This document shows, one piece after another, positions 7,835 to 60,944 of a stretch of 64,000 nucleotides of DNA. Location of the stretch: positions 124,001 through 188,000 of the IMG/VR virus record IMGVR_UViG_3300005056_000001, one strand, 5' to 3'. Positions within the stretch are counted from its first letter, which is position 1. Every line of letters starts with the position of its first letter. Both the position numbers and the translations under genes were made by a program. The notes under the pieces were generated by a model. It saw nothing but the letters and a program-made list of their open reading frames with translations, was not told where the DNA came from and did no database searches.

Positions 7835-9106
7835 ATGGAGATTCGTCTTAAAAATATTGCATGTATCAAGGACAGCACCATAAAGATTGGCGGACTGACG
7901 GTCTTAACAGGGGAAAACAACACAGGCAAAAGTATACTAGGCAAGGTTTTATATGGTATACAAGCAGGTGTTTTTCAACAAAAACATGCCTATATATCCC
8001 ACAAGGAAACTGTGATGACAATTCTTTGTAAGGAATTGGTTGTCTTTATTAGAGATTGTAGTTCCTATGACAGGAGACGTAGTGTGCGAAAAATATTCTC
8101 TCCAAAACATTATTTTGATGAGCTGATGTCAATGATTGATGAGCAAGACGCAAAAGTTTTTGAGGGATGGAAAGATAACATCTATGATAATGCAGCCAAA
8201 TTCTTGGAAAGGAAAAATGACCTTGATATTGTTAGGGTAAAATTGGACAGCATGATCCACGCCCTAAAAATTGCCCCAAACAGAAGGGATGAACTAGTCG
8301 GATGTGTGGGTCGGAATTTATCGAATAACCTGCAAGGGAACATTAAGCACGACCGCAAAAAAGAGGCCCGTATTGTTGTAAGTGATGAACAAGGCGAAAT
8401 AATAAATATTTCGGCTTCTGAAAATAGCCATATTGTTGATTCGGTGTCGTTGCGTGAGGATTATGTGTTTAATGCGGTTAGTGTGGTTGAGTCGCCTGTT
8501 TACCTACAATTAAGCCTCTCGGATACGCTCATACCCTACCAAGAACAGCTAATGACTATGTTGGTGGATGGAAAATATTATAAATGTCCCGAGGAAAGTG
8601 TTTGTGGCGACCATGATATATGGCTAGACAAACAAATAAAAAATATAACCTCTATTATAGGCGGTACTATTTCTTCTTGCCCAAAAGGGTTTGTGTTTAT
8701 AAAAAACATGAATGTTGATGGTAAGCGTGGATTTAAGGACATCCCGTCAACTGCCTGTTCTCTTGGTGTCCTGACATTTGGCATGATACAATTGTTATTA
8801 AAGGGACATGGTATTGTAAAAAATGGAGTCGTGTTTATTGACACTCCTGAAGCCCATTTACACCCCAAGCAACAAGTAGAATATGCCAAGGTAATAGCCG
8901 AATTAATTAAATATGGGGTTAATGTGATATTAACCACCAATAGTCCCTACATGCTCAAGGCATTGGTTGAGTACACAAAAGAATGCCCGTCCAATTATTA
9001 TTTTGCGACTCGTGGAGAGGGCGGTTGCAATATGGAAAATATCACATATAATCTAAACAAGGCATTTGTTTCGTTTGCGGAACCATTGCAGGATCTTGTT
9101 TGGTAA
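7835..9106 (+). CDS. AAA_15/AAA_21-type ABC ATPase with degenerate catalytic motifs
   Basis: Walker A LTGENNTGKS; Walker B FIDTPEAHLHP; H-loop TTNSP; TATATTTG box at 7799-7806. Confidence 0.85.
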   Translation: MEIRLKNIACIKDSTIKIGGLTVLTGENNTGKSILGKVLYGIQAGVFQQKHAYISHKETVMTILCKELVVFIRDCSSYDRRRSVRKIFSPKHYFDELMSMIDEQDAKVFEGWKDNIYDNAAKFLERKNDLDIVRVKLDSMIHALKIAPNRRDELVGCVGRNLSNNLQGNIKHDRKKEARIVVSDEQGEIINISASENSHIVDSVSLREDYVFNAVSVVESPVYLQLSLSDTLIPYQEQLMTMLVDGKYYKCPEESVCGDHDIWLDKQIKNITSIIGGTISSCPKGFVFIKNMNVDGKRGFKDIPSTACSLGVLTFGMIQLLLKGHGIVKNGVVFIDTPEAHLHPKQQVEYAKVIAELIKYGVNVILTTNSPYMLKALVEYTKECPSNYYFATRGEGGCNMENITYNLNKAFVSFAEPLQDLVW

Positions 9107-40743: not shown

Positions 40744-41979
40744 ATGATCAAAAAAATAAAAACGGTAGAGTTGTTTGCAGGGGTTGGGGGTTTTAGATTG
40801 GGCTTGGAGAAGTACAATAAGTACGAAATCGTTTGGAGCAACCAATGGGAACCATCCACGAAAAAACAACATGCATCATTGGTGTATGAGGCAAGATTTG
40901 GAACCAAGAACCATTCAAATGAGGACATTGGTTGTGTCCAAACAGAAGAGATACCCGACCATGACCTCCTTGTTGGGGGTTTCCCTTGTCAGGACTATTC
41001 GGTTGCCACAACCCTAAACAATGCCAAGGGTTTGGTGGGGAAAAAGGGGGTTTTGTGGTGGTCTATCCATAGAATACTAAAGGAAAAGGCCCACAAACCA
41101 AAATACTTGTTGTTTGAGAATGTAGACCGACTCTTGAAGTCTCCGTCTAGCCAAAGAGGACGAGACTTTGGGGTTATGCTAAAGAGCCTGTCTGAACTAG
41201 GCTATGCCATTGAATGGCGTGTGGTGAATGCTGCCGAATATGGCATGCCACAAAGAAGACGTCGGGTGTTTTTTATAGGCTATCACAAATCAACAAGCAT
41301 TTATAAAAAACTCGAAAGTGCCAATAAGTCGGAATGGATTACAAAGGACGGCACAATCACAGGCGCATTTCCTGTCAATAGCCAAGAAGAGCCTTGTAAC
41401 AATTTTAAGTTGGATGGTAGCCTTGTCGAGATTACCGAGGACTTCAACAAAGGCGGAAAGATGTCTCCGTTTTTAAACTCGGGTGTGATGATAGACGGAA
41501 ACGTTTACACAACAAAGACTATACCTTTATATGATGGTCGGAAGACAGTCCTTAAAGACATCCTACAAAGCGAGGGTATCGAAGACGAATTCTATATCGA
41601 CGGTAATGACCACGACAGATGGAAATACCTGAAGGGCTCCAAAAAAGAACAACGAACAACCAAGGATGGTTTTACCTATAACTATACCGAAGGATCCATG
41701 ATTTTCCCTGATGCCTTAGACAATGCGTCTAGGACAATTATCACAGGAGAAGGAGGAAAGTCACCCTCACGATTTAAGCACGTCATAGAATCAAAAGAGG
41801 GCCTAAGACGATTGATACCTGTTGAACTAGAGCGATTGAATATGTTTCCTGACGACCACACCAAATTGGATGGTATTTCCAACACAAAACGTGCATTTTT
41901 TATGGGGAATGCCTTGGTTGTGGGAGTGATCGAGAAGTTGGGTGAGGTATTGTTTGAGCGTGTTGGTGGAGATTTGTAA
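40744..41979 (+). CDS. dcm: C5 cytosine DNA methyltransferase, M.Sau3AI-like (probable GATC specificity)
   Basis: ELFAGVGG, VWSNQWEPS, GGFPCQDYSVA, ENVDRLLKSP, QRRRR, MGNALVV. Confidence 0.92.
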   Translation: MIKKIKTVELFAGVGGFRLGLEKYNKYEIVWSNQWEPSTKKQHASLVYEARFGTKNHSNEDIGCVQTEEIPDHDLLVGGFPCQDYSVATTLNNAKGLVGKKGVLWWSIHRILKEKAHKPKYLLFENVDRLLKSPSSQRGRDFGVMLKSLSELGYAIEWRVVNAAEYGMPQRRRRVFFIGYHKSTSIYKKLESANKSEWITKDGTITGAFPVNSQEEPCNNFKLDGSLVEITEDFNKGGKMSPFLNSGVMIDGNVYTTKTIPLYDGRKTVLKDILQSEGIEDEFYIDGNDHDRWKYLKGSKKEQRTTKDGFTYNYTEGSMIFPDALDNASRTIITGEGGKSPSRFKHVIESKEGLRRLIPVELERLNMFPDDHTKLDGISNTKRAFFMGNALVVGVIEKLGEVLFERVGGDL

Positions 41980-53529: not shown

Positions 53530-54735
53530 TTGAAGAAAAACAAGACATATAAATACAGGTTATCCCCTAATGTTACACAAAGCATTATGCTGAATAAAAC
53601 ATTCGGTTGTGTGCGTGCATATTGGAATAATCTTGTTGCGACATTTAATTCGTATGATAAAGTAACTAATCCCAAGCCTTTATTTAATACAGGAAAGGAG
53701 TTTAGTGACGTTTTTGTTTACGCAAAGGAAGTATCTGCTGCATCACTACAGCAAAAGTTTCGTGATTTTTCTCAATTCAAAAATCAGTTCTTCAATAAAA
53801 AAAGGAAAAAGAAAATAGGAAGGCCAAGCTTTAAGAAAAAAGGTTTTGGAGATTCCTTTAGATTGCCCAACCAAAAAATCCGTATCAAGGATAACAAAAT
53901 TAGACTTGAAAAGATTGGTTGGGTTAAATTTGACAACCACAGACAATTGCCTGTGGATTCACGTGTCCTGTCAATAACAGTAAAGAAAGACAGTGTAGGA
54001 GATTATTTTGCTTCTGTCTGTTTTGAGTATGTATGGAAGCCCAAGATAAATAGAATGAACATTATAGAGTCAAAAAAGGAAGTATCTACTATAAAACCAA
54101 ATGTGGGCATCGACCTAGGACTTACCTATTTAGCCATCCTTTCGGATGGTACAGTATTCTTGAATCCTAAATATCTTAGAGAAAGCCAATCTAAGCTTAA
54201 AAAGTCACAAAGAATCCTTTCCCGAAAAATAAAAGGTAGTGTACGATGGAACAGGCAACGGATAAAGGTTGCCAAATTACACCGTAAGATTGTTCGTCAA
54301 CGTGATTGGTCACATCATAACATAACCACGTGGATAGCCGACAATTACAACAACGTAGGGATTGAAACGTTAAGTATACAAAACATGATGAAGAACAGGA
54401 AACTTTCTAAATCTTTTGCTGATACCTCACTAAGTAAATTTGTCAATATGCTTATTTATAAGGTAGATGATAGAGGCAACGAGGTAGTCAGACTAGGAAC
54501 GTTTGTTCCTTCGACAAAAGAATGTTCTTCCTGTTCACACCAACAGACCGTTGCGCTATCTGAAAGAACCTTTAAATGCGAATGCTGTGGATTTGCCATG
54601 GATAGGGACTTGAATGCAGCAATAAATATTAAGAAAAAGACCGTAGGAGTTAATGCGGTCATCGCCAATGGCGACAAACGAACACTGAGCAACAAGAAGT
54701 CTCTACACCCGAATGTGGGTGTAAAGCAGTTGTGA
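53530..54735 (+). CDS. tnpB: TnpB RNA-guided endonuclease (IS200/IS605, IS1341-type, no tnpA)
   Basis: YKYRLSPN..FGCVR..WN; GIDLG; IETL; CSSC/CECC; DRDLNAAINI. Confidence 0.95.
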   Translation: MKKNKTYKYRLSPNVTQSIMLNKTFGCVRAYWNNLVATFNSYDKVTNPKPLFNTGKEFSDVFVYAKEVSAASLQQKFRDFSQFKNQFFNKKRKKKIGRPSFKKKGFGDSFRLPNQKIRIKDNKIRLEKIGWVKFDNHRQLPVDSRVLSITVKKDSVGDYFASVCFEYVWKPKINRMNIIESKKEVSTIKPNVGIDLGLTYLAILSDGTVFLNPKYLRESQSKLKKSQRILSRKIKGSVRWNRQRIKVAKLHRKIVRQRDWSHHNITTWIADNYNNVGIETLSIQNMMKNRKLSKSFADTSLSKFVNMLIYKVDDRGNEVVRLGTFVPSTKECSSCSHQQTVALSERTFKCECCGFAMDRDLNAAINIKKKTVGVNAVIANGDKRTLSNKKSLHPNVGVKQL

Positions 54736-55663: not shown

Positions 55664-55736
55664 AATAAGGCAAAAAGGAAATATCATTATTTTGATATTT
55701 CCTTTTGTTTTTGTGTAATTTTCACTATATTGCAGA

Positions 55737-56702
55737 ATGAACATAAAAATATACAAAAACGGAACAATGCCCGAAATGCTAGAGGGTGTGTACCCATTCG
55801 AATGTTACACAATACAGCCATTGCCACACGAGCGATTCGAGACAAAATCTCAACAACTATGGATGGATGGTGCAAGAGATCTTTGGATAAAGGACTATCT
55901 TTATACCAAGGAAACACATGCATGGATACATTTTGAATCAATTTCCTCGATGATATGTCACGACCCCAACAACTTTTTGTCGCTTATTGGCAGCAAGATA
56001 ACGGAGGCAGGTCTTGGAATTGAATATATACGATCTATGATAGCGTATCATGATAACTATTTAGACGATCTTCCTGTTATGAAAAAAGAAATCGCACTAC
56101 CAAACGTAGAAGTTGCAGTCTCAAGCGCAAAAAACAAAATATTGCAGGGTGTTAAACCCTTTATGACATTCCGAATAGAGGATATAATTGGTTACGATCT
56201 ATATATATCGGATGGCGATCTGTGGGTAAAGGACGACCACCATCAAGAAATGCACAATACCCGTTGGGTAGAATTCTTGGATCTGTACGACATCTACACG
56301 ATCTCCAAAGACAATGTTGAATTTATTGCCAATACACGTAAAATGCTTACAGAAAACTTTTTGGTTGGTGATAAGTATAATTCCATGATGCTTGCCTATT
56401 ATGACTACCACAAGGTTCGTGTGGCTTATATTGGACAACGTCTCAAACCCGAATTCATAAAAGAACTCGAACGTTTAGACATGACCATTCCCGACGAGCT
56501 TTTGGAAGAGTTTATTGATAAATATAAACCCGAGGTATGTGACACACTTGAACGTGGAGACCTATTACAGTTTATTGGAAAAAAGGTCACAGGAATGGAT
56601 TGGCCATGTAATGGCGACGACCAAAGTAGCAAAATCGAGTTTTTTAGAATTCTTCATAAAAACAGTAAGTCATTTGGTATTGAAATAATAAACACAAAAT
56701 AA
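55737..56702 (+). CDS. hypothetical protein
   Basis: long ORF. Confidence 0.7.
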   Translation: MNIKIYKNGTMPEMLEGVYPFECYTIQPLPHERFETKSQQLWMDGARDLWIKDYLYTKETHAWIHFESISSMICHDPNNFLSLIGSKITEAGLGIEYIRSMIAYHDNYLDDLPVMKKEIALPNVEVAVSSAKNKILQGVKPFMTFRIEDIIGYDLYISDGDLWVKDDHHQEMHNTRWVEFLDLYDIYTISKDNVEFIANTRKMLTENFLVGDKYNSMMLAYYDYHKVRVAYIGQRLKPEFIKELERLDMTIPDELLEEFIDKYKPEVCDTLERGDLLQFIGKKVTGMDWPCNGDDQSSKIEFFRILHKNSKSFGIEIINTK

Positions 56703-56704
56703 TC

Positions 56705-57313
56705 ATGAAAATAACAATTTTAACAGAGTCGTTTCATAGACCCCAAAAGAAAAAGGATATCGTTATGTCACATGACGGAACAATGTACATTTCGGAAACA
56801 AACATGGGTTCACGTATTGCGCCCGACAAAAGAATTGTGTTGGTCTATTTTTGCATACCTCTGTACCAAGAAGACGGTCTAATAAAGGCAGAGGTTGGTG
56901 ATTGGATAATTGTGTCTAGATTTGGGGAAACAAGAGCTCCACGAAAAGTTACACAAGATTATATCGAATACAACCCACTGCCTATGCGTGGAACGTACAA
57001 AATAATCGCAACCAATAATGTCGAGATTATGTCCGACATTAACCCCACAGAAAAAGGTGTGTGTGTTCCTATACATGTTCTTAAGGGATTCGTGAAATGG
57101 AACAACAACAATCTGAATGCTCCTAGTATCCACGACAACCTAGACTTGACTTCAACAGACTTCGGCTTGTTGGGCAGAGACGACATTCAGGATGCGGCTG
57201 CCAACACAACATTAATGGACATGGCAGAATCAAATCCGTCAGATATTACAATATTTGAGAAAGGTTTTGAAGAAGGCGCAAAATATGTCCTAAACCACAC
57301 AAAATTTTTATAA
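56705..57313 (+). CDS. hypothetical protein
   Basis: IK...GDW...KIIAT motif seen in Bacteroidota phages. Confidence 0.65.
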   Translation: MKITILTESFHRPQKKKDIVMSHDGTMYISETNMGSRIAPDKRIVLVYFCIPLYQEDGLIKAEVGDWIIVSRFGETRAPRKVTQDYIEYNPLPMRGTYKIIATNNVEIMSDINPTEKGVCVPIHVLKGFVKWNNNNLNAPSIHDNLDLTSTDFGLLGRDDIQDAAANTTLMDMAESNPSDITIFEKGFEEGAKYVLNHTKFL

Positions 57314-57762
57314 TGAACAAGAAAGCATGGTACCCCGAATGGTATTGGACAGGCAAGCGTGTCGATGATGCCAAGTTAATAAACAATCCACATATTAAAC
57401 AGGAGGGTGAACGAGAGGATCGAATTGTTGAAACACGTGAATTATTGAACGAGATGTCGGGATGGGACTCGTTTACATGGAAAGAAGCCTGTAATATACA
57501 AAACTACCTATTGGCCCGAAACAATTGGTGTGGTGTCAAGGCAGGGATACGTGAACACACTGTTGGCTTCGACAACGCCAAGAAGCCACAAGACATTGAT
57601 GTGTCGAGTATATTTCCTGTGTCGGTCATGTTGTATCCAACAAAGGACGAGTTGTTGGAATGGTACTATAGGTTTCAATTGGAGCATCCTTTTAGCGACC
57701 TAAACGGCCGTGTTGGAGGAATAATAGTTTCGGTTCTTTATGACAGGCTAAATCAAAAATAA
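57313..57762 (+). CDS. minimal Fic/Doc-like protein
   Basis: HPFSDLNGRVGG. Confidence 0.75.
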   Translation: MNKKAWYPEWYWTGKRVDDAKLINNPHIKQEGEREDRIVETRELLNEMSGWDSFTWKEACNIQNYLLARNNWCGVKAGIREHTVGFDNAKKPQDIDVSSIFPVSVMLYPTKDELLEWYYRFQLEHPFSDLNGRVGGIIVSVLYDRLNQK

Positions 57763-58187
57763 TGGAACAAACACTAGAAGAAATCGCAAGATCCGCAGTT
57801 GTCGAGGTAAAGGAGTACTTTCCTGTTACATTCACACGACTCAAAAGTTACGATTCACACATAAGACACATCACAAGCCTAGAAAGTGAAACGCTCGATG
57901 CTGACAGATTGAAATGTCTTAGATTAATCAGCAACATCTTGACCACACAACCATATCTTAGTTTCTTTATACAAGACCCTGAGTCTGAAATACCTGTTTT
58001 GTTTTCGGGTTGGGAGGTGGCTTTTGTGAATAAAGAAACTACCTACATAGCCAATGGCAATAATATACTGTCATTTGTTAATCTGAACACACTTTGTGTC
58101 TGTATGTCTATTGACGCATTTAGTAAAACCCATGTACATTCGCTTTTTGATATAACCCGAAAGTTTGAGCTTGAGATTTTGGGTTAA
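57762..58187 (+). CDS. hypothetical protein
   Basis: coupled ORF. Confidence 0.6.
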   Translation: MEQTLEEIARSAVVEVKEYFPVTFTRLKSYDSHIRHITSLESETLDADRLKCLRLISNILTTQPYLSFFIQDPESEIPVLFSGWEVAFVNKETTYIANGNNILSFVNLNTLCVCMSIDAFSKTHVHSLFDITRKFELEILG

Positions 58188-58230
58188 AAGGCGTTATTGT
58201 GGTAGAATTTTATAAAAAATAAACAACAAC

Positions 58231-58644
58231 ATGAAATTAAAGATTAAGATTCCGATCAAATTTGGCAACATCGCAATAACCAAAAACAGTATAAGCGGTG
58301 ACACCAATGACAGTTCTAATTGGGACTCGTTTTCGTTTCCTTTGCCTGAAGGGGATTGGTACATTGAAAGTAGTGATATGGGACACATTGTGTTGGTTAA
58401 CAAGACTCCTGTGTATGAATATATTGACATCAGAGTCAGAGCCGCACTAGACAGTGACGGTTCTGTGTTTAGACCCGAGAACCCAAGATTCATAGGAGAG
58501 CTTTGGTGGAAGGGTGGTTTGGTTCATACAACAGTCGATTCAGACACGAAAGACGAGGCCTACAAAAAAGTCTTGACACACATTAACTACGAGAATGAAC
58601 ATCTAGAATCAGGGATGTATTTACAGGATCCGAGCAACCAATAG
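58231..58644 (+). CDS. hypothetical protein
   Basis: ORF. Confidence 0.6.
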   Translation: MKLKIKIPIKFGNIAITKNSISGDTNDSSNWDSFSFPLPEGDWYIESSDMGHIVLVNKTPVYEYIDIRVRAALDSDGSVFRPENPRFIGELWWKGGLVHTTVDSDTKDEAYKKVLTHINYENEHLESGMYLQDPSNQ

Positions 58645-58718
58645 GAAGAGTCGGATTGTCCAAAAACATTTTTTGATTTTTCACTGAGTTTTGTTAATAC
58701 GTTTAAGCCAAAAAATAT

Positions 58719-58997
58719 ATGAATGCAAATTTTCACATAGAAGAGTATTGTAGTTCGACACCAACCTACGCTGTTCTAACAAACGAAGACTTGAAAAATT
58801 ATTACACCACAGACTTTTATAGCCCCGAGTCCGAAAAAGGTTATAACGATGAGGACTACTATAATACCAACAAGATCATAGACATTTATAGTCCTGAATC
58901 CGAGGTCGAAAAGGGTTATAACGAGTAGGATTCCCACAATGGCGACAAAATCATAGAAAGCTTTGCGGACTATGGAAGAAGAATGAATACAAATTAA
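58719..58997 (+). pseudogene. chimeric duplicate of fragments of 59006 and 59391, with an internal TAG
   Basis: MNxNFHIEEY start plus two YSPES..EKGYN copies. Confidence 0.65.
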
Positions 58998-59005
58998 CTA
59001 CGAGC

Positions 59006-59380
59006 ATGAATACAAATTTTCACATAGAAGAATATAACAATCCGAACCCAACCTACATTGTTCTAACCATGAGCTATGTAAGTTTTAGCGACTACTTGCC
59101 CGAGATTGCCAAGGTTTTAAATCTTAAAACCTTCAAGGGCACCGTTTTGTTTGATTTACTTTTGAATAATGGCAGACATCATAGATTTTATGATGTCGAG
59201 TTTTCCGATAAGACGTTTCAACTGTCCACATTTAAAAATATTAAACCAAATCAAGACCTCCTGAAATTCTGTGCAAACTTTTATATCAAAAATTTATCGT
59301 TGATTGATGATAGCCTTTTCCCTGAATCCGAAAACACCCTGATAAAAAATCATATTAAAGAGTATTCACAAACAATATAA
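59006..59380 (+). CDS. rnlB: RnlB/LsoB-family antitoxin, orphan
   Basis: IVLTMSY.S...L.EI...L....FKGTVLFDLLLNNG...RF. Confidence 0.78.
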   Translation: MNTNFHIEEYNNPNPTYIVLTMSYVSFSDYLPEIAKVLNLKTFKGTVLFDLLLNNGRHHRFYDVEFSDKTFQLSTFKNIKPNQDLLKFCANFYIKNLSLIDDSLFPESENTLIKNHIKEYSQTI

Positions 59381-59390
59381 ACAATAAATA

Positions 59391-59786
59391 ATGAGTAAAA
59401 AACGTGTAATGTACGGCGGTGTAGCCGATTGGACTGTAGCAAACAAGGAGATGTATGAACACTTGAGCAAAACAGTCGTTTCTATAAATTTCTTTGAGAT
59501 CGGAGCAGGGTCAGAGCTAGATTGGATTGTTGCCGCAGACATGAAATCTGCTAGAGAATGGCTAAAAAGAGAAAGTGGGAACACCAAAAGTAGGACAAAG
59601 CAGTTGTCCAATGATGTTTTGGACGACTATTACATCACAGACATTTATAGTCCCGAATCCGAGGCAGAAAAAGGTTATAACGAGGAAGACTACTTCCGTG
59701 GCTACAAAATCATAGAAAGCTTTGCGGACTATGGAAGACGTCTTAAGAATAGTTGTCCACATTTGATTGCGTCAACAAAAGAGTAA
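59391..59786 (+). CDS. hypothetical protein
   Basis: ORF. Confidence 0.65.
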   Translation: MSKKRVMYGGVADWTVANKEMYEHLSKTVVSINFFEIGAGSELDWIVAADMKSAREWLKRESGNTKSRTKQLSNDVLDDYYITDIYSPESEAEKGYNEEDYFRGYKIIESFADYGRRLKNSCPHLIASTKE

Positions 59787-59917: not shown

Positions 59918-59952
59918 AAATGCCCAATAATTATAATAATTATTGGGCATTT
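59918..59952. terminator. hairpin between convergent genes
   Basis: AAATGCCCAATAATTAT..ATAATTATTGGGCATTT. Confidence 0.7.
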
Positions 59953-59954
59953 GC

Positions 59955-60944
59955 TTATACATCCTTTAGTTGCTCCTTAATACTATCGGCCAGAAATTTG
60001 GCTAAATTGACAGGAACAGCATTCCCAATCATTTTATATCCTGTGGCAACTTTTTTGTAATGAAAAATAAAATCATCAGGAAATGTTTGTATCCGTGCAC
60101 ATTCTCTTACGCTTAGGCGTCTGTATAAATGTTCTTGTGTGGGTTCGAATATGCGCTTGTCACGCTCAATAGATACCATTTTTGGAGCCTGTGGATGTAT
60201 GGGGGCATGTCTTCCTCCTGCCTGAATAGTAAAGGACTGTTCGTTCCAACTTCTGACCCTGTTTCTTGACATATACATTGACGAAAAACCTCCGATCATA
60301 TATTCATGGTTGGGTACTTTGCACTGTCCGTTGCTATAATTCTTTTCTAGCGCAGCAAGGCTATTGTGTTGTAAGTCCGATATTGTCTCCTGTAGTGTTA
60401 TTTTCGGGAATGTAATGTCAGGAAATTTGAAATCGAAACCCAAATCTTTTCGGATGCCAATAAATATCACACGTTTTCTGTCTTGGGGAACATTGTAGTC
60501 GGATGCATTAAGGAGTTTGAATGATAGGTTATAACCAACACCCGCATTTTTTAACATTTCCTTTATGTTATCCAAGGCAGATTCGTGTTTTTTGAGCAAC
60601 ATACCACTCACATTTTCTGCCAAGAAGAATTTGGGTTGTTTGTCATTAAGGATTCTAATAAAGTCAAAGAACAACTGTCCTCTTTTGTCGTCCATACCCT
60701 TAAGACTACCTGCTTCGCTCCAACTTTGGCAGGGCGGGCCACCGATGATACCATCACAATCAGGAACCGCATCCGAGGTTATTTTTGTGATACTTCGTTT
60801 GTCCAATATGGTTTCGGGATGATTCTTTTCATAGGTTTCCCAAATATCCTTGTCATATTCGTTGGCCCAAATAACATCAAAGCCTGCCTTTTGGAATCCT
60901 AAATCCAATCCGCCTGCACCCGCAAAAAAAGAAACTACTTTCAT
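59955..60944 (-). CDS. C5 cytosine DNA methyltransferase, M.HaeIII-like (probable GGCC specificity)
   Basis: FAGAGG, GGPPCQSWSEAG, ENV, QDRKR, TRD MSRNRVR.W.E..FTIQA.GR...HPQAP. Confidence 0.93.
   Translation of the reverse strand: MKVVSFFAGAGGLDLGFQKAGFDVIWANEYDKDIWETYEKNHPETILDKRSITKITSDAVPDCDGIIGGPPCQSWSEAGSLKGMDDKRGQLFFDFIRILNDKQPKFFLAENVSGMLLKKHESALDNIKEMLKNAGVGYNLSFKLLNASDYNVPQDRKRVIFIGIRKDLGFDFKFPDITFPKITLQETISDLQHNSLAALEKNYSNGQCKVPNHEYMIGGFSSMYMSRNRVRSWNEQSFTIQAGGRHAPIHPQAPKMVSIERDKRIFEPTQEHLYRRLSVRECARIQTFPDDFIFHYKKVATGYKMIGNAVPVNLAKFLADSIKEQLKDV

What the first reader, a model, noticed from the sequence alone, without database searches (positions are those of the whole stretch)
59006..59380. 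Orphan RnlB-like antitoxin
Seen: the G.VLFDLL..NG...RF core and ~124-aa length typical of RnlB/LsoB, with no rnlA nearby. Established: RnlA/LsoA are anti-phage HEPN RNases released when their antitoxin decays, and T4 counters them with the unrelated Dmd. Inference: this phage instead carries a captured cognate-type antitoxin.
Basis: partly seen in the sequence, partly recalled or inferred. Interest (0 to 1): 0.7.

Follow-up and report, generated by a model that had tools for sequence, protein, structure and literature searches.

The report
Orphan RnlB antitoxin in jumbo phage
A 368-kb marine phage carries an intact copy of the bacterial RnlB antitoxin but not the RnlA toxin it normally restrains, so the phage most likely uses it to switch off a host suicide RNase that would otherwise abort infection.

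Summary
Window 59006-59380 (+) encodes a 124-aa protein that matches Pfam RnlB_antitoxin (E 8.5e-20, 71 bits against a cut-off of 27). It keeps every invariant family residue. Its model (pLDDT 94.8) matches only E. coli RnlB in the PDB (6y2p_C, TM 0.77-0.80).

The window lies in a complete 368,109-bp virus record with terminal repeats, a jumbo myovirus related to Bacteroidota phages. Three Pfam RnlA models, a custom RnlA HMM over all six-frame ORFs, and profile comparison of nine neighbouring ORFs found no RnlA anywhere in that genome.

The nearest homolog (46-48% identity) sits directly behind a full RnlA, as do five of the next six. The phage gene therefore groups with working cognate antitoxins. 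A distantly related phage-like contig, a 164-kb viral contig and Marinitoga camini virus 1 also carry RnlB without RnlA.

Best reading (about 0.6): a captured cognate antitoxin used as counter-defence against host RnlA-type HEPN RNases. This is a homologous route, distinct from T4 Dmd. Binding is untested; the complex prediction gave no verdict.

Directly upstream lies a chimeric relic of a tandem duplication of this gene and its downstream neighbour.

I found no paper describing phage RnlB homologs.

The parts
59006..59380 (+). rnlB-like gene, 124 aa (P0001): an intact orphan antitoxin of the RnlB family
   Evidence: ORF. Pfam PF15933 E 8.5e-20. phrog_22343, E 2e-11, function unknown. AF2 pLDDT 94.8. 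The only significant PDB fold match is 6y2p_C, E. coli RnlB, TM 0.77/0.80. Family-invariant residues are present.
58719..59005 (+). Chimeric relic of a duplicated copy. It joins the first 21 codons of an rnlB-like gene in frame to the 3' part of a copy of the downstream ORF131. It carries a 75-nt internal duplication and an in-frame TAG at 58926.
   Evidence: 58719-58780 matches 59006-59067 (51 of 62 nt). 58875-58979 matches 59634-59738 (91 of 105 nt). 58825-58882 matches 58900-58957. TAG is an ordinary stop in this genome: it ends 86 of 327 long ORFs.
59391..59786 (+). ORF131, the downstream neighbour that was duplicated together with rnlB-like. Function unknown.
   Evidence: phrog_5459 E 1.2e-4, function unknown. 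Atlas neighbours are viral hypothetical proteins. No resemblance to RnlA. No homolog lies next to the other orphan rnlB genes.
55737..59786 (+). Tightly packed cluster of same-strand small genes of unknown function (321, 202, 149, 141, 137 aa, the relic, rnlB-like, 131 aa). rnlB-like is the second-to-last gene.
   Evidence: ORF list. No Pfam or PADLOC family except a weak Fic-motif match in ORF149.
55673..55706 (.). 14-bp stem hairpin with T tracts on both sides. Likely a bidirectional terminator marking the upstream edge of the cluster.
   Evidence: Terminator scan.
59918..59952 (.). Perfect 17-nt-arm palindrome between the cluster and the convergent C5 methyltransferase gene. The terminator scan called it on the minus strand only, behind the methyltransferase gene; as a perfect palindrome it could also stop the plus-strand cluster (inference).
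   Evidence: the repeat finder I2; terminator scan, minus strand.

Best explanation
The gene encodes a folded, single-domain RnlB-family antitoxin that a jumbo myovirus acquired from a bacterial rnlA-rnlB module and kept without the toxin. Proposed mechanism: in RnlAB-bearing hosts, infection shuts off host gene expression, the labile host RnlB is degraded, and the HEPN RNase RnlA is freed to destroy phage mRNA. The phage supplies its own RnlB-like protein, which would bind the canonical HEPN dimer of RnlA beside the active-site cleft, as E. coli RnlB does in 6Y2P. That would block RNA entry and exit and keep the toxin silent so infection proceeds. Shown here: family and fold membership, absence of any RnlA in the complete phage genome, kinship with genuinely paired antitoxins, and recurrence of the orphan state in other phages. 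Inferred: binding, the identity of the target RnlA, early expression, and benefit to the phage.
For: (1) Membership: PF15933 at 71 bits; the profile of 51 homologs hits E. coli RnlB 6y2p_C at E 5.6e-14; the AF2 model has pLDDT 94.8 and a unique fold match to 6y2p_C at TM 0.77-0.80 and rmsd 2.3 A over 118 columns; invariant D50 and R60 and near-invariant G45, L52 and G56 are retained. (2) Orphan status: PF15935, PF19034 and PF18869 find nothing in the 368-kb record at E<=1; a custom RnlA HMM over all six-frame ORFs of 50 aa or more finds nothing; hhalign of nine neighbour ORFs against the RnlA profile gives at most 1.7% probability, against 99.7% for the positive control. (3) Cognate origin: P0002 (46-48% identity) lies 17 nt after a 350-aa protein with all four RnlA Pfam domains. 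P0004, P0005, P0006, P0007 and P0008 also lie behind an RnlA. P0001, P0002 and P0003 form a clade with SH-aLRT 97-98. (4) Retention in phages: P0003 (35% identity) sits among small genes without RnlA on contig L005, which shares two further genes with this phage at 42-53% aa identity. A 164-kb IMG/VR contig and Marinitoga camini virus 1 carry RnlB with no RnlA in the whole record. PHROGs already holds the family as phrog_22343, function unknown. (5) Setting: a virus record with terminal repeats, tail sheath and tail genes and no tyrosine integrase. The gene lies in an accessory region with two C5 DNA methyltransferases. (6) A relic of a tandem duplication of the gene lies directly upstream; gene amplification is a documented route by which T4 overcomes a TA defence (abstract of PMC9391042). 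(7) RnlAB biology and RnlB's binding mode are taken from PMC8266594 and PMC11869752.
Against: There is no experimental or computational evidence of binding; the one complex prediction gave no verdict. The host and its RnlA are unknown. No close RnlB relative was found in representative prokaryote genomes. Antitoxins of this family are, from my own knowledge of Otsuka and Yonesaki 2012, specific to their own toxin, so a captured copy would protect only against closely related RnlA variants. Expression timing is unknown and no RNA data exist. Orphan RnlB genes also occur outside obvious phage contexts: 13 of 29 metagenome loci have no RnlA in the DNA held. Orphan status alone therefore does not prove counter-defence.
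Confidence: 0.6

Rival explanations
1. Neutral leftover: the phage lineage once carried a complete rnlA-rnlB module, as some proviruses do for superinfection exclusion. It lost the toxin, and the antitoxin survives without a current function.
For: Viral contigs with a full RnlAB (L008; L009 is a provirus) and one with only an RnlA C-terminal fragment plus RnlB (L007) show this decay path exists. Local rearrangement is evident just upstream.
Against: The ORF is intact, keeps all invariant residues and folds confidently. No RnlA remnant is detectable upstream; the relic there consists of rnlB and ORF131 pieces only. The orphan state is shared with a contig related at only 35-53% aa identity, which implies long retention. 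Even under this origin, the retained protein would still act on incoming RnlA.
Confidence: 0.15
2. It is the antitoxin or immunity partner of a different, unrecognised toxin encoded by the phage itself, for example ORF131, ORF137 or the Fic-motif protein ORF149. The pair would form a phage-borne TA or exclusion module.
For: rnlB-like and ORF131 were duplicated as a unit. ORF149, 1.2 kb upstream, carries an HPFSDLNGR Fic-like motif (Pfam Fic E 0.21; PADLOC PDC-S04 E 7e-5). In metagenome locus L026, a 369-aa ORF with no RnlA similarity overlaps the start of a near-identical-clade RnlB.
Against: No neighbour matches any toxin family above threshold. In RnlAB modules the toxin lies directly upstream, and here that position holds only the relic. 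No ORF131 or ORF137 homolog accompanies the other orphan RnlBs. ORF149 is separated from the gene by two genes and the relic.
Confidence: 0.12
3. The RnlB fold has been re-used for something unrelated to toxin neutralisation, such as binding another host RNA-metabolism protein.
For: Sequence identity to E. coli RnlB is low: only a 42-residue core aligns pairwise at 40%. RnlA activity is linked to RNase HI in E. coli, so the family touches other partners.
Against: The protein lies inside a clade with a genuinely paired antitoxin at 46-48% identity. The family-wide invariant residues are unchanged.
Confidence: 0.08

Closest known systems
E. coli K-12 RnlB (antitoxin of the rnlA-rnlB module; PDB 6Y2P chain C) and the Pfam family PF15933
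   Same: Same family and fold, and the same size (124 against 123 aa). Same conserved G-x-V/I-x-F-D-L-L-x-x-N-G-x(3-4)-R core.
   Different: No rnlA partner anywhere in the genome, and the carrier is a jumbo, apparently virulent phage rather than a chromosome, plasmid or prophage. Pairwise identity to E. coli RnlB is only about 23% over the alignment.
Phage T4 Dmd
   Same: The proposed role is the same: a phage-made protein that directly silences the RnlA/LsoA HEPN RNase after host RnlB decays.
   Different: Dmd has no similarity to RnlB, binds a different site (the groove between TBP2 and HEPN) and is thought to have evolved independently. The protein here is a homolog of the cognate antitoxin, so it was captured rather than invented. 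From my own knowledge of the family, it probably has a narrower toxin range.
Orphan antitoxin counter-defences: T4-like AdfN (a DarG1-like NADAR) and the chimallivirus DarG2-like antitoxin
   Same: The logic is the same: a phage carries a stand-alone homolog of a TA antitoxin and uses it against the host toxin (PMC11825919; abstract of PMC13309987).
   Different: Those are type IV enzymatic antitoxins that reverse DNA ADP-ribosylation. RnlB is a type II antitoxin that works by stoichiometric binding, so specificity and dosage should matter more.
Prophage or provirus-borne complete RnlAB modules (for example IMG/VR loci L008 and L009; E. coli CP4-57)
   Same: The same antitoxin family on viral DNA.
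   Different: Those keep the toxin and presumably defend the lysogen. This phage has the antitoxin only.

Membership tests
RnlB antitoxin family (PF15933) | Sequence match to the family model above the curated threshold | tested here: met
   E 8.5e-20, 71.3 bits against a cut-off of 27, profile positions 2-93 of 94. The same result came from the six-frame genome search.
RnlB antitoxin family (PF15933) | Conserved core residues (G-x-V-x-F-D-L-L...N-G...R) | tested here: met
   D50 and R60 are invariant, and G45, L52 and G56 are conserved at 90% or more in 51 homologs. All are present in the window protein.
RnlB antitoxin family (PF15933) | Single-domain alpha/beta fold of E. coli RnlB (mixed beta-sheet packed against helices) | tested here: met
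   AF2 pLDDT 94.8. Foldseek against the PDB gives one significant hit, 6y2p_C: probability 1.00, TM 0.77/0.80, rmsd 2.3 A over 118 columns. The fold description is from PMC8266594.
RnlB antitoxin family (PF15933) | Encoded directly downstream of an rnlA toxin gene in one operon | tested here: not met
   No RnlA domain anywhere in the 368-kb genome. This lowers 'part of an RnlAB TA module', not 'RnlB-family protein'.
RnlB antitoxin family (PF15933) | Binds and neutralises an RnlA/LsoA HEPN RNase | tested here: inconclusive
   Complex prediction with the RnlA of L003 returned no verdict. It needs a bench test.
RnlB antitoxin family (PF15933) | Proteolytic lability (Lon/ClpXP) in the cell | not testable with these tools
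   Described for E. coli RnlB. It cannot be read from sequence.
Phage-encoded anti-TA counter-defence (Dmd, AdfN type) | Carried by a phage that lacks the corresponding toxin | tested here: met
   Virus record with direct terminal repeats and completeness 100. Tail sheath and tail genes. No tyrosine integrase. No RnlA.
Phage-encoded anti-TA counter-defence (Dmd, AdfN type) | Expressed early in infection and required for growth on hosts with the defence | not testable with these tools
   No RNA runs hold the sequence, and the phage is uncultured.

The most novel reading that the evidence does not exclude
Large phages of several lineages have repeatedly captured cognate RnlB antitoxins and keep them, without the toxin, as a dedicated counter-defence against RnlA-type HEPN RNase abortive-infection systems. 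The carriers include this Bacteroidota-type jumbo myovirus, a 164-kb viral contig, a 176-kb metagenome contig and a Thermotogota virus. This would be a homologous-antitoxin route parallel to, and independent of, T4 Dmd. The duplication relic next to the gene would then be the scar of a dosage 'accordion' under that selection.
Probability: 0.45. Interest if true: 0.7.

Novelty: new variant of a known kind. Interest (0 to 1): 0.58.

Why it matters
RnlAB is a textbook toxin-antitoxin phage defence, and T4 Dmd is one of the few phage-encoded direct inhibitors of a bacterial toxin described. It is unrelated to the cognate antitoxin. A phage that instead carries a true RnlB homolog would show that type II protein antitoxins can be captured and used directly as anti-defence genes. 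Until now this has been shown for enzymatic DarG-like antitoxins (PMC11825919). It would give function to an unannotated phage protein family (phrog_22343). It would also offer a simple rule for mining anti-defence genes: look for antitoxin families present in phages without their toxins. Finally, it points to RnlAB-type defences being active in marine Bacteroidota. The prediction can be tested directly by co-expression.

Tried and rejected
- **Complex prediction.** The window protein with the 350-aa RnlA of L003 gave no verdict: score 0.00, and the partner's fold was uncertain without an alignment. This is no evidence either way.
- **Word-index protein search.** It found only the protein itself. 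The exhaustive phmmer search was needed.
- **IMG/VR scan with the single protein.** Nothing found. The 51-sequence alignment was too diverse to seed a scan.
- **Taxon-based genome searches.** Not available for a virus record.
- **Metagenome scan with the tight clade alignment.** Nothing found.
- **Sigma-70 and Bacteroidota promoter scans.** Neither exceeded chance: 20 sites found against 22.9 expected, and 95 TAnnTTTG matches against 83 +/- 8 expected. No promoter is assigned.
- **tRNA scan of the window.** No tRNA genes.
- **Terminase_6C.** Not found. Phage identity rests on tail genes and the record's terminal repeats.
- **In-frame TAG in the upstream relic.** I considered that it signals an alternative code and rejected this. 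TAG ends 86 of 327 long ORFs in this genome.
- **ORF131's C-terminal RRLKNSCPH as a HEPN Rx4-6H motif.** Considered and rejected. The protein does not resemble the RnlA HEPN profile, and the duplicated copy lacks the histidine.

Full report
**1. Is it there?**

Window 59006..59380 (+) is an ATG-to-TAA ORF of 124 codons.

Pfam's RnlB_antitoxin model (PF15933) matches at E 8.5e-20 and 71.3 bits, against a curated cut-off of 27, over profile positions 2-93 of 94. NCBIfam and PADLOC have no match. PHROGs places it in phrog_22343, a phage family of unknown function.

An exhaustive phmmer search of 1.84 billion representative proteins gave 210 relatives at E<=1e-3, nearly all 115-130 aa. In an alignment of 51 of them, D50 and R60 are invariant and G45, L52 and G56 are at 90% or more. 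The window protein has all five.

A profile of that alignment finds E. coli RnlB (6y2p_C) at E 5.6e-14. An AlphaFold2 model built on the alignment has mean pLDDT 94.8. Foldseek against the PDB returns a single significant match, 6y2p_C, with probability 1.00, TM 0.77/0.80 and rmsd 2.3 A over 118 columns. Direct BLASTP to K-12 RnlB (123 aa) aligns only the core, so this is a divergent but unambiguous family member.

**2. What carries it?**

The window is bases 124001-188000 of a 368,109-bp virus record with direct terminal repeats and completeness 100. GC content is 38%, and all three stop codons are in use.

The genome encodes a 983-aa tail sheath (phrog_34521, E 2e-151), a tail protein, ribonucleotide reductase and an NAD-dependent ligase. 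It has no tyrosine integrase.

The nearest known tail sheath is that of Tenacibaculum phage pT24, at 34% identity over the full length. Of the 25 matching records with a named host, 23 infect Bacteroidota: Prevotella, Tenacibaculum, Chryseobacterium and Flavobacterium.

Only 2.9% of 343 gene starts have a Shine-Dalgarno core at -20..-5, and the leaders are about 60% A from -14 to -3. From established knowledge, that is the Bacteroidota pattern. Identical short contigs occur in seawater and subsurface metagenome runs, including pieces across 58956-59143 and 59066-59216.

**3. Is it really an orphan?**

Three Pfam RnlA models (RnlA_toxin, RnlA-toxin_DBD, HEPN_RnaseLS) find nothing in the whole genome at E<=1. 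The same search tool does detect RnlA in three other viral records.

I built an RnlA HMM from seven, then 24, RnlA proteins and ran it over every stop-to-stop frame of 50 aa or more in the genome. It gave no hit, while finding 17 RnlAs in other loci.

hhalign of the nine neighbouring ORFs against the RnlA profile gives at most 1.7% probability. A 131-aa RnlA fragment used as positive control scores 99.7%.

**4. Where does it come from?**

- The closest relative, P0002 (46-48% identity), lies 17 nt downstream of a 350-aa protein carrying all four RnlA Pfam domains, on two contigs.
- P0004, P0005 and P0007 lie behind full RnlAs.
- P0006 and P0008 lie behind contig-truncated HEPN_RnaseLS C-termini.
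- In trees, the window protein, P0002 and P0003 form a clade with SH-aLRT 97-98.

The phage gene thus nests among working cognate antitoxins. This is what 'captured' predicts.

**5. Is the orphan state peculiar to this phage?**

No.

- P0003 (35% identity) sits at the end of a run of six small genes without RnlA on contig L005. Two other L005 genes match this phage's genome at 277.8-278.2 kb with 42-53% aa identity. L005 is therefore from a distant relative that also keeps the gene alone.
- A 164-kb IMG/VR contig (L006) has an RnlB (PF15933, E 2.6e-20) beside a CCA-adding enzyme gene and no RnlA in the whole record.
- Marinitoga camini virus 1 likewise has an RnlB at 83 bits annotated 'hypothetical protein', with no RnlA in its 53-kb genome.
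- Of 29 metagenome RnlB loci, 16 have an RnlA directly upstream (17 HMM hits, one of them the viral locus L007) and 13 have none in the DNA held. Seven of those 13 have at least 1.2 kb upstream. They include a 176-kb contig (L027) with a weak S-adenosylmethionine-lyase-like neighbour.
- On the labelled tree, at least eight paired/orphan switches are needed.
- Other viral contigs carry complete RnlAB (L008; L009 is a provirus) or a decayed RnlA plus RnlB (L007).

**6. Local anatomy**

The gene is second-to-last in a tight same-strand cluster of small unknown genes (55737-59786). The cluster is bounded upstream by a hairpin at 55673-55706 and downstream by a perfect 17-nt-arm palindrome at 59918-59952 (the terminator scan called this one on the minus strand only), beyond which lies a convergent C5 DNA methyltransferase gene.

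Directly upstream (58719-59005) is a chimeric relic with three parts:

- 62 nt copy the 5' end of the rnlB-like gene (51 of 62 identical).
- These are joined in frame to a copy of the 3' third of the downstream ORF131 (91 of 105 identical).
- The relic carries a 75-nt internal duplication and an in-frame TAG.

This is the scar of a tandem duplication of the rnlB-ORF131 unit followed by an internal deletion. TAG is a normal stop in this genome, so no recoding is implied. No other paralogs exist in the genome.

**7. Mechanism**

In E. coli, RnlB is rapidly degraded by Lon/ClpXP. T4 shut-off stops its replenishment, and free RnlA cleaves phage mRNA. T4 survives through Dmd.

RnlB binds the active canonical HEPN dimer of RnlA as two monomers that bridge the dimer and block entry to and exit from the RNA groove.

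The simplest reading of an intact RnlB homolog in a toxin-less, apparently virulent phage is that the phage makes replacement antitoxin during infection. The literature notes that Dmd is unrelated to RnlB and probably arose independently. Capture of the cognate antitoxin would therefore be a different evolutionary route. It parallels the orphan DarG-like antitoxins of T4-like and nucleus-forming phages.

Because type II antitoxins act stoichiometrically, dosage matters. The duplication relic is compatible with past amplification under selection, as seen experimentally for T4 tifA (abstract of PMC9391042). That link is speculative.

**8. What is not shown**

Binding is untested; the single complex prediction returned no verdict. 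The host, the target RnlA and the timing of expression are unknown.

Rivals:

- A neutral leftover of a decayed phage-borne RnlAB.
- Partnership with an unrecognised phage toxin. Candidates are ORF131, which co-duplicated with the gene, and ORF149, which has a Fic-like HPFSDLNGR motif.
- A re-purposed fold.

None of these has positive support beyond what is listed. I put the counter-defence reading at about 0.6.

**9. Novelty**

Full-text searches found no paper using 'RnlB-like' or 'RnlB homolog(s)', and none describing phage-encoded RnlB. Databases hold such phage proteins only as 'hypothetical' or as an unnamed PHROG.

The protein is a new member of a known family. Its use by phages as an orphan is a new variant of a known strategy.

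Noticed in passing
window 57313-57762 (+): ORF149 carries HPFSDLNGRVGG, close to the Fic/Doc active-site motif. The matches are weak: Pfam Fic E 0.21, PADLOC PDC-S04 E 7e-5 and SoFic E 0.009. It may be a small Fic/Doc-like protein in the same gene cluster.
   Followed up: partly
window 53530-54735 (+): A TnpB/IS605 OrfB-type gene (OrfB_IS605, Cas12f1-like TNB and HTH domains) lies inside the jumbo phage genome.
   Followed up: no
window 40744-41979 (+) and 59955-60944 (-): Two C5 cytosine DNA methyltransferases lie within 20 kb (E 3e-65 and 5e-101). Elsewhere in the genome a 988-aa helicase has a methyltransferase/DarB-like N-terminal part. This suggests heavy investment in anti-restriction.
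   Followed up: no
window 7835-9106 (+): A 423-aa protein has AAA_15/AAA_21 (AbiEii/OLD-like ABC ATPase) C-terminal matches. It is a defence-type ATPase encoded by the phage.
   Followed up: no
L006 4800-7387 (IMGVR_UViG_2698536665_000003): In a 164-kb viral contig the orphan RnlB gene is followed, one small gene later, by a CCA-adding enzyme with PolyA_pol, RNA-binding and HD domains. This may be a small RNA-damage counter-defence neighbourhood.
   Followed up: partly
L026 79-1615; also L017, L019, L021, L023 against L020 and L031: A clade of nearly identical metagenomic RnlBs (branch lengths 0.06 or less) is found either behind a 500-aa RnlA or with no RnlA. In L026 the RnlB lies behind an overlapping 369-aa ORF with no known family. 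This could be recent toxin loss or toxin swapping.
   Followed up: partly
L002 2436-2837 (Marinitoga camini virus 1, UF08_53): A ParE-like toxin domain protein (E 9e-11) lies three genes upstream of that virus's orphan RnlB. Both are annotated as hypothetical proteins in the record.
   Followed up: no
whole genome G000: Gene starts almost entirely lack Shine-Dalgarno cores: 2.9%, against 10.5% at an in-gene control position. They have A-rich leaders with 71% A at position -3.
   Followed up: yes
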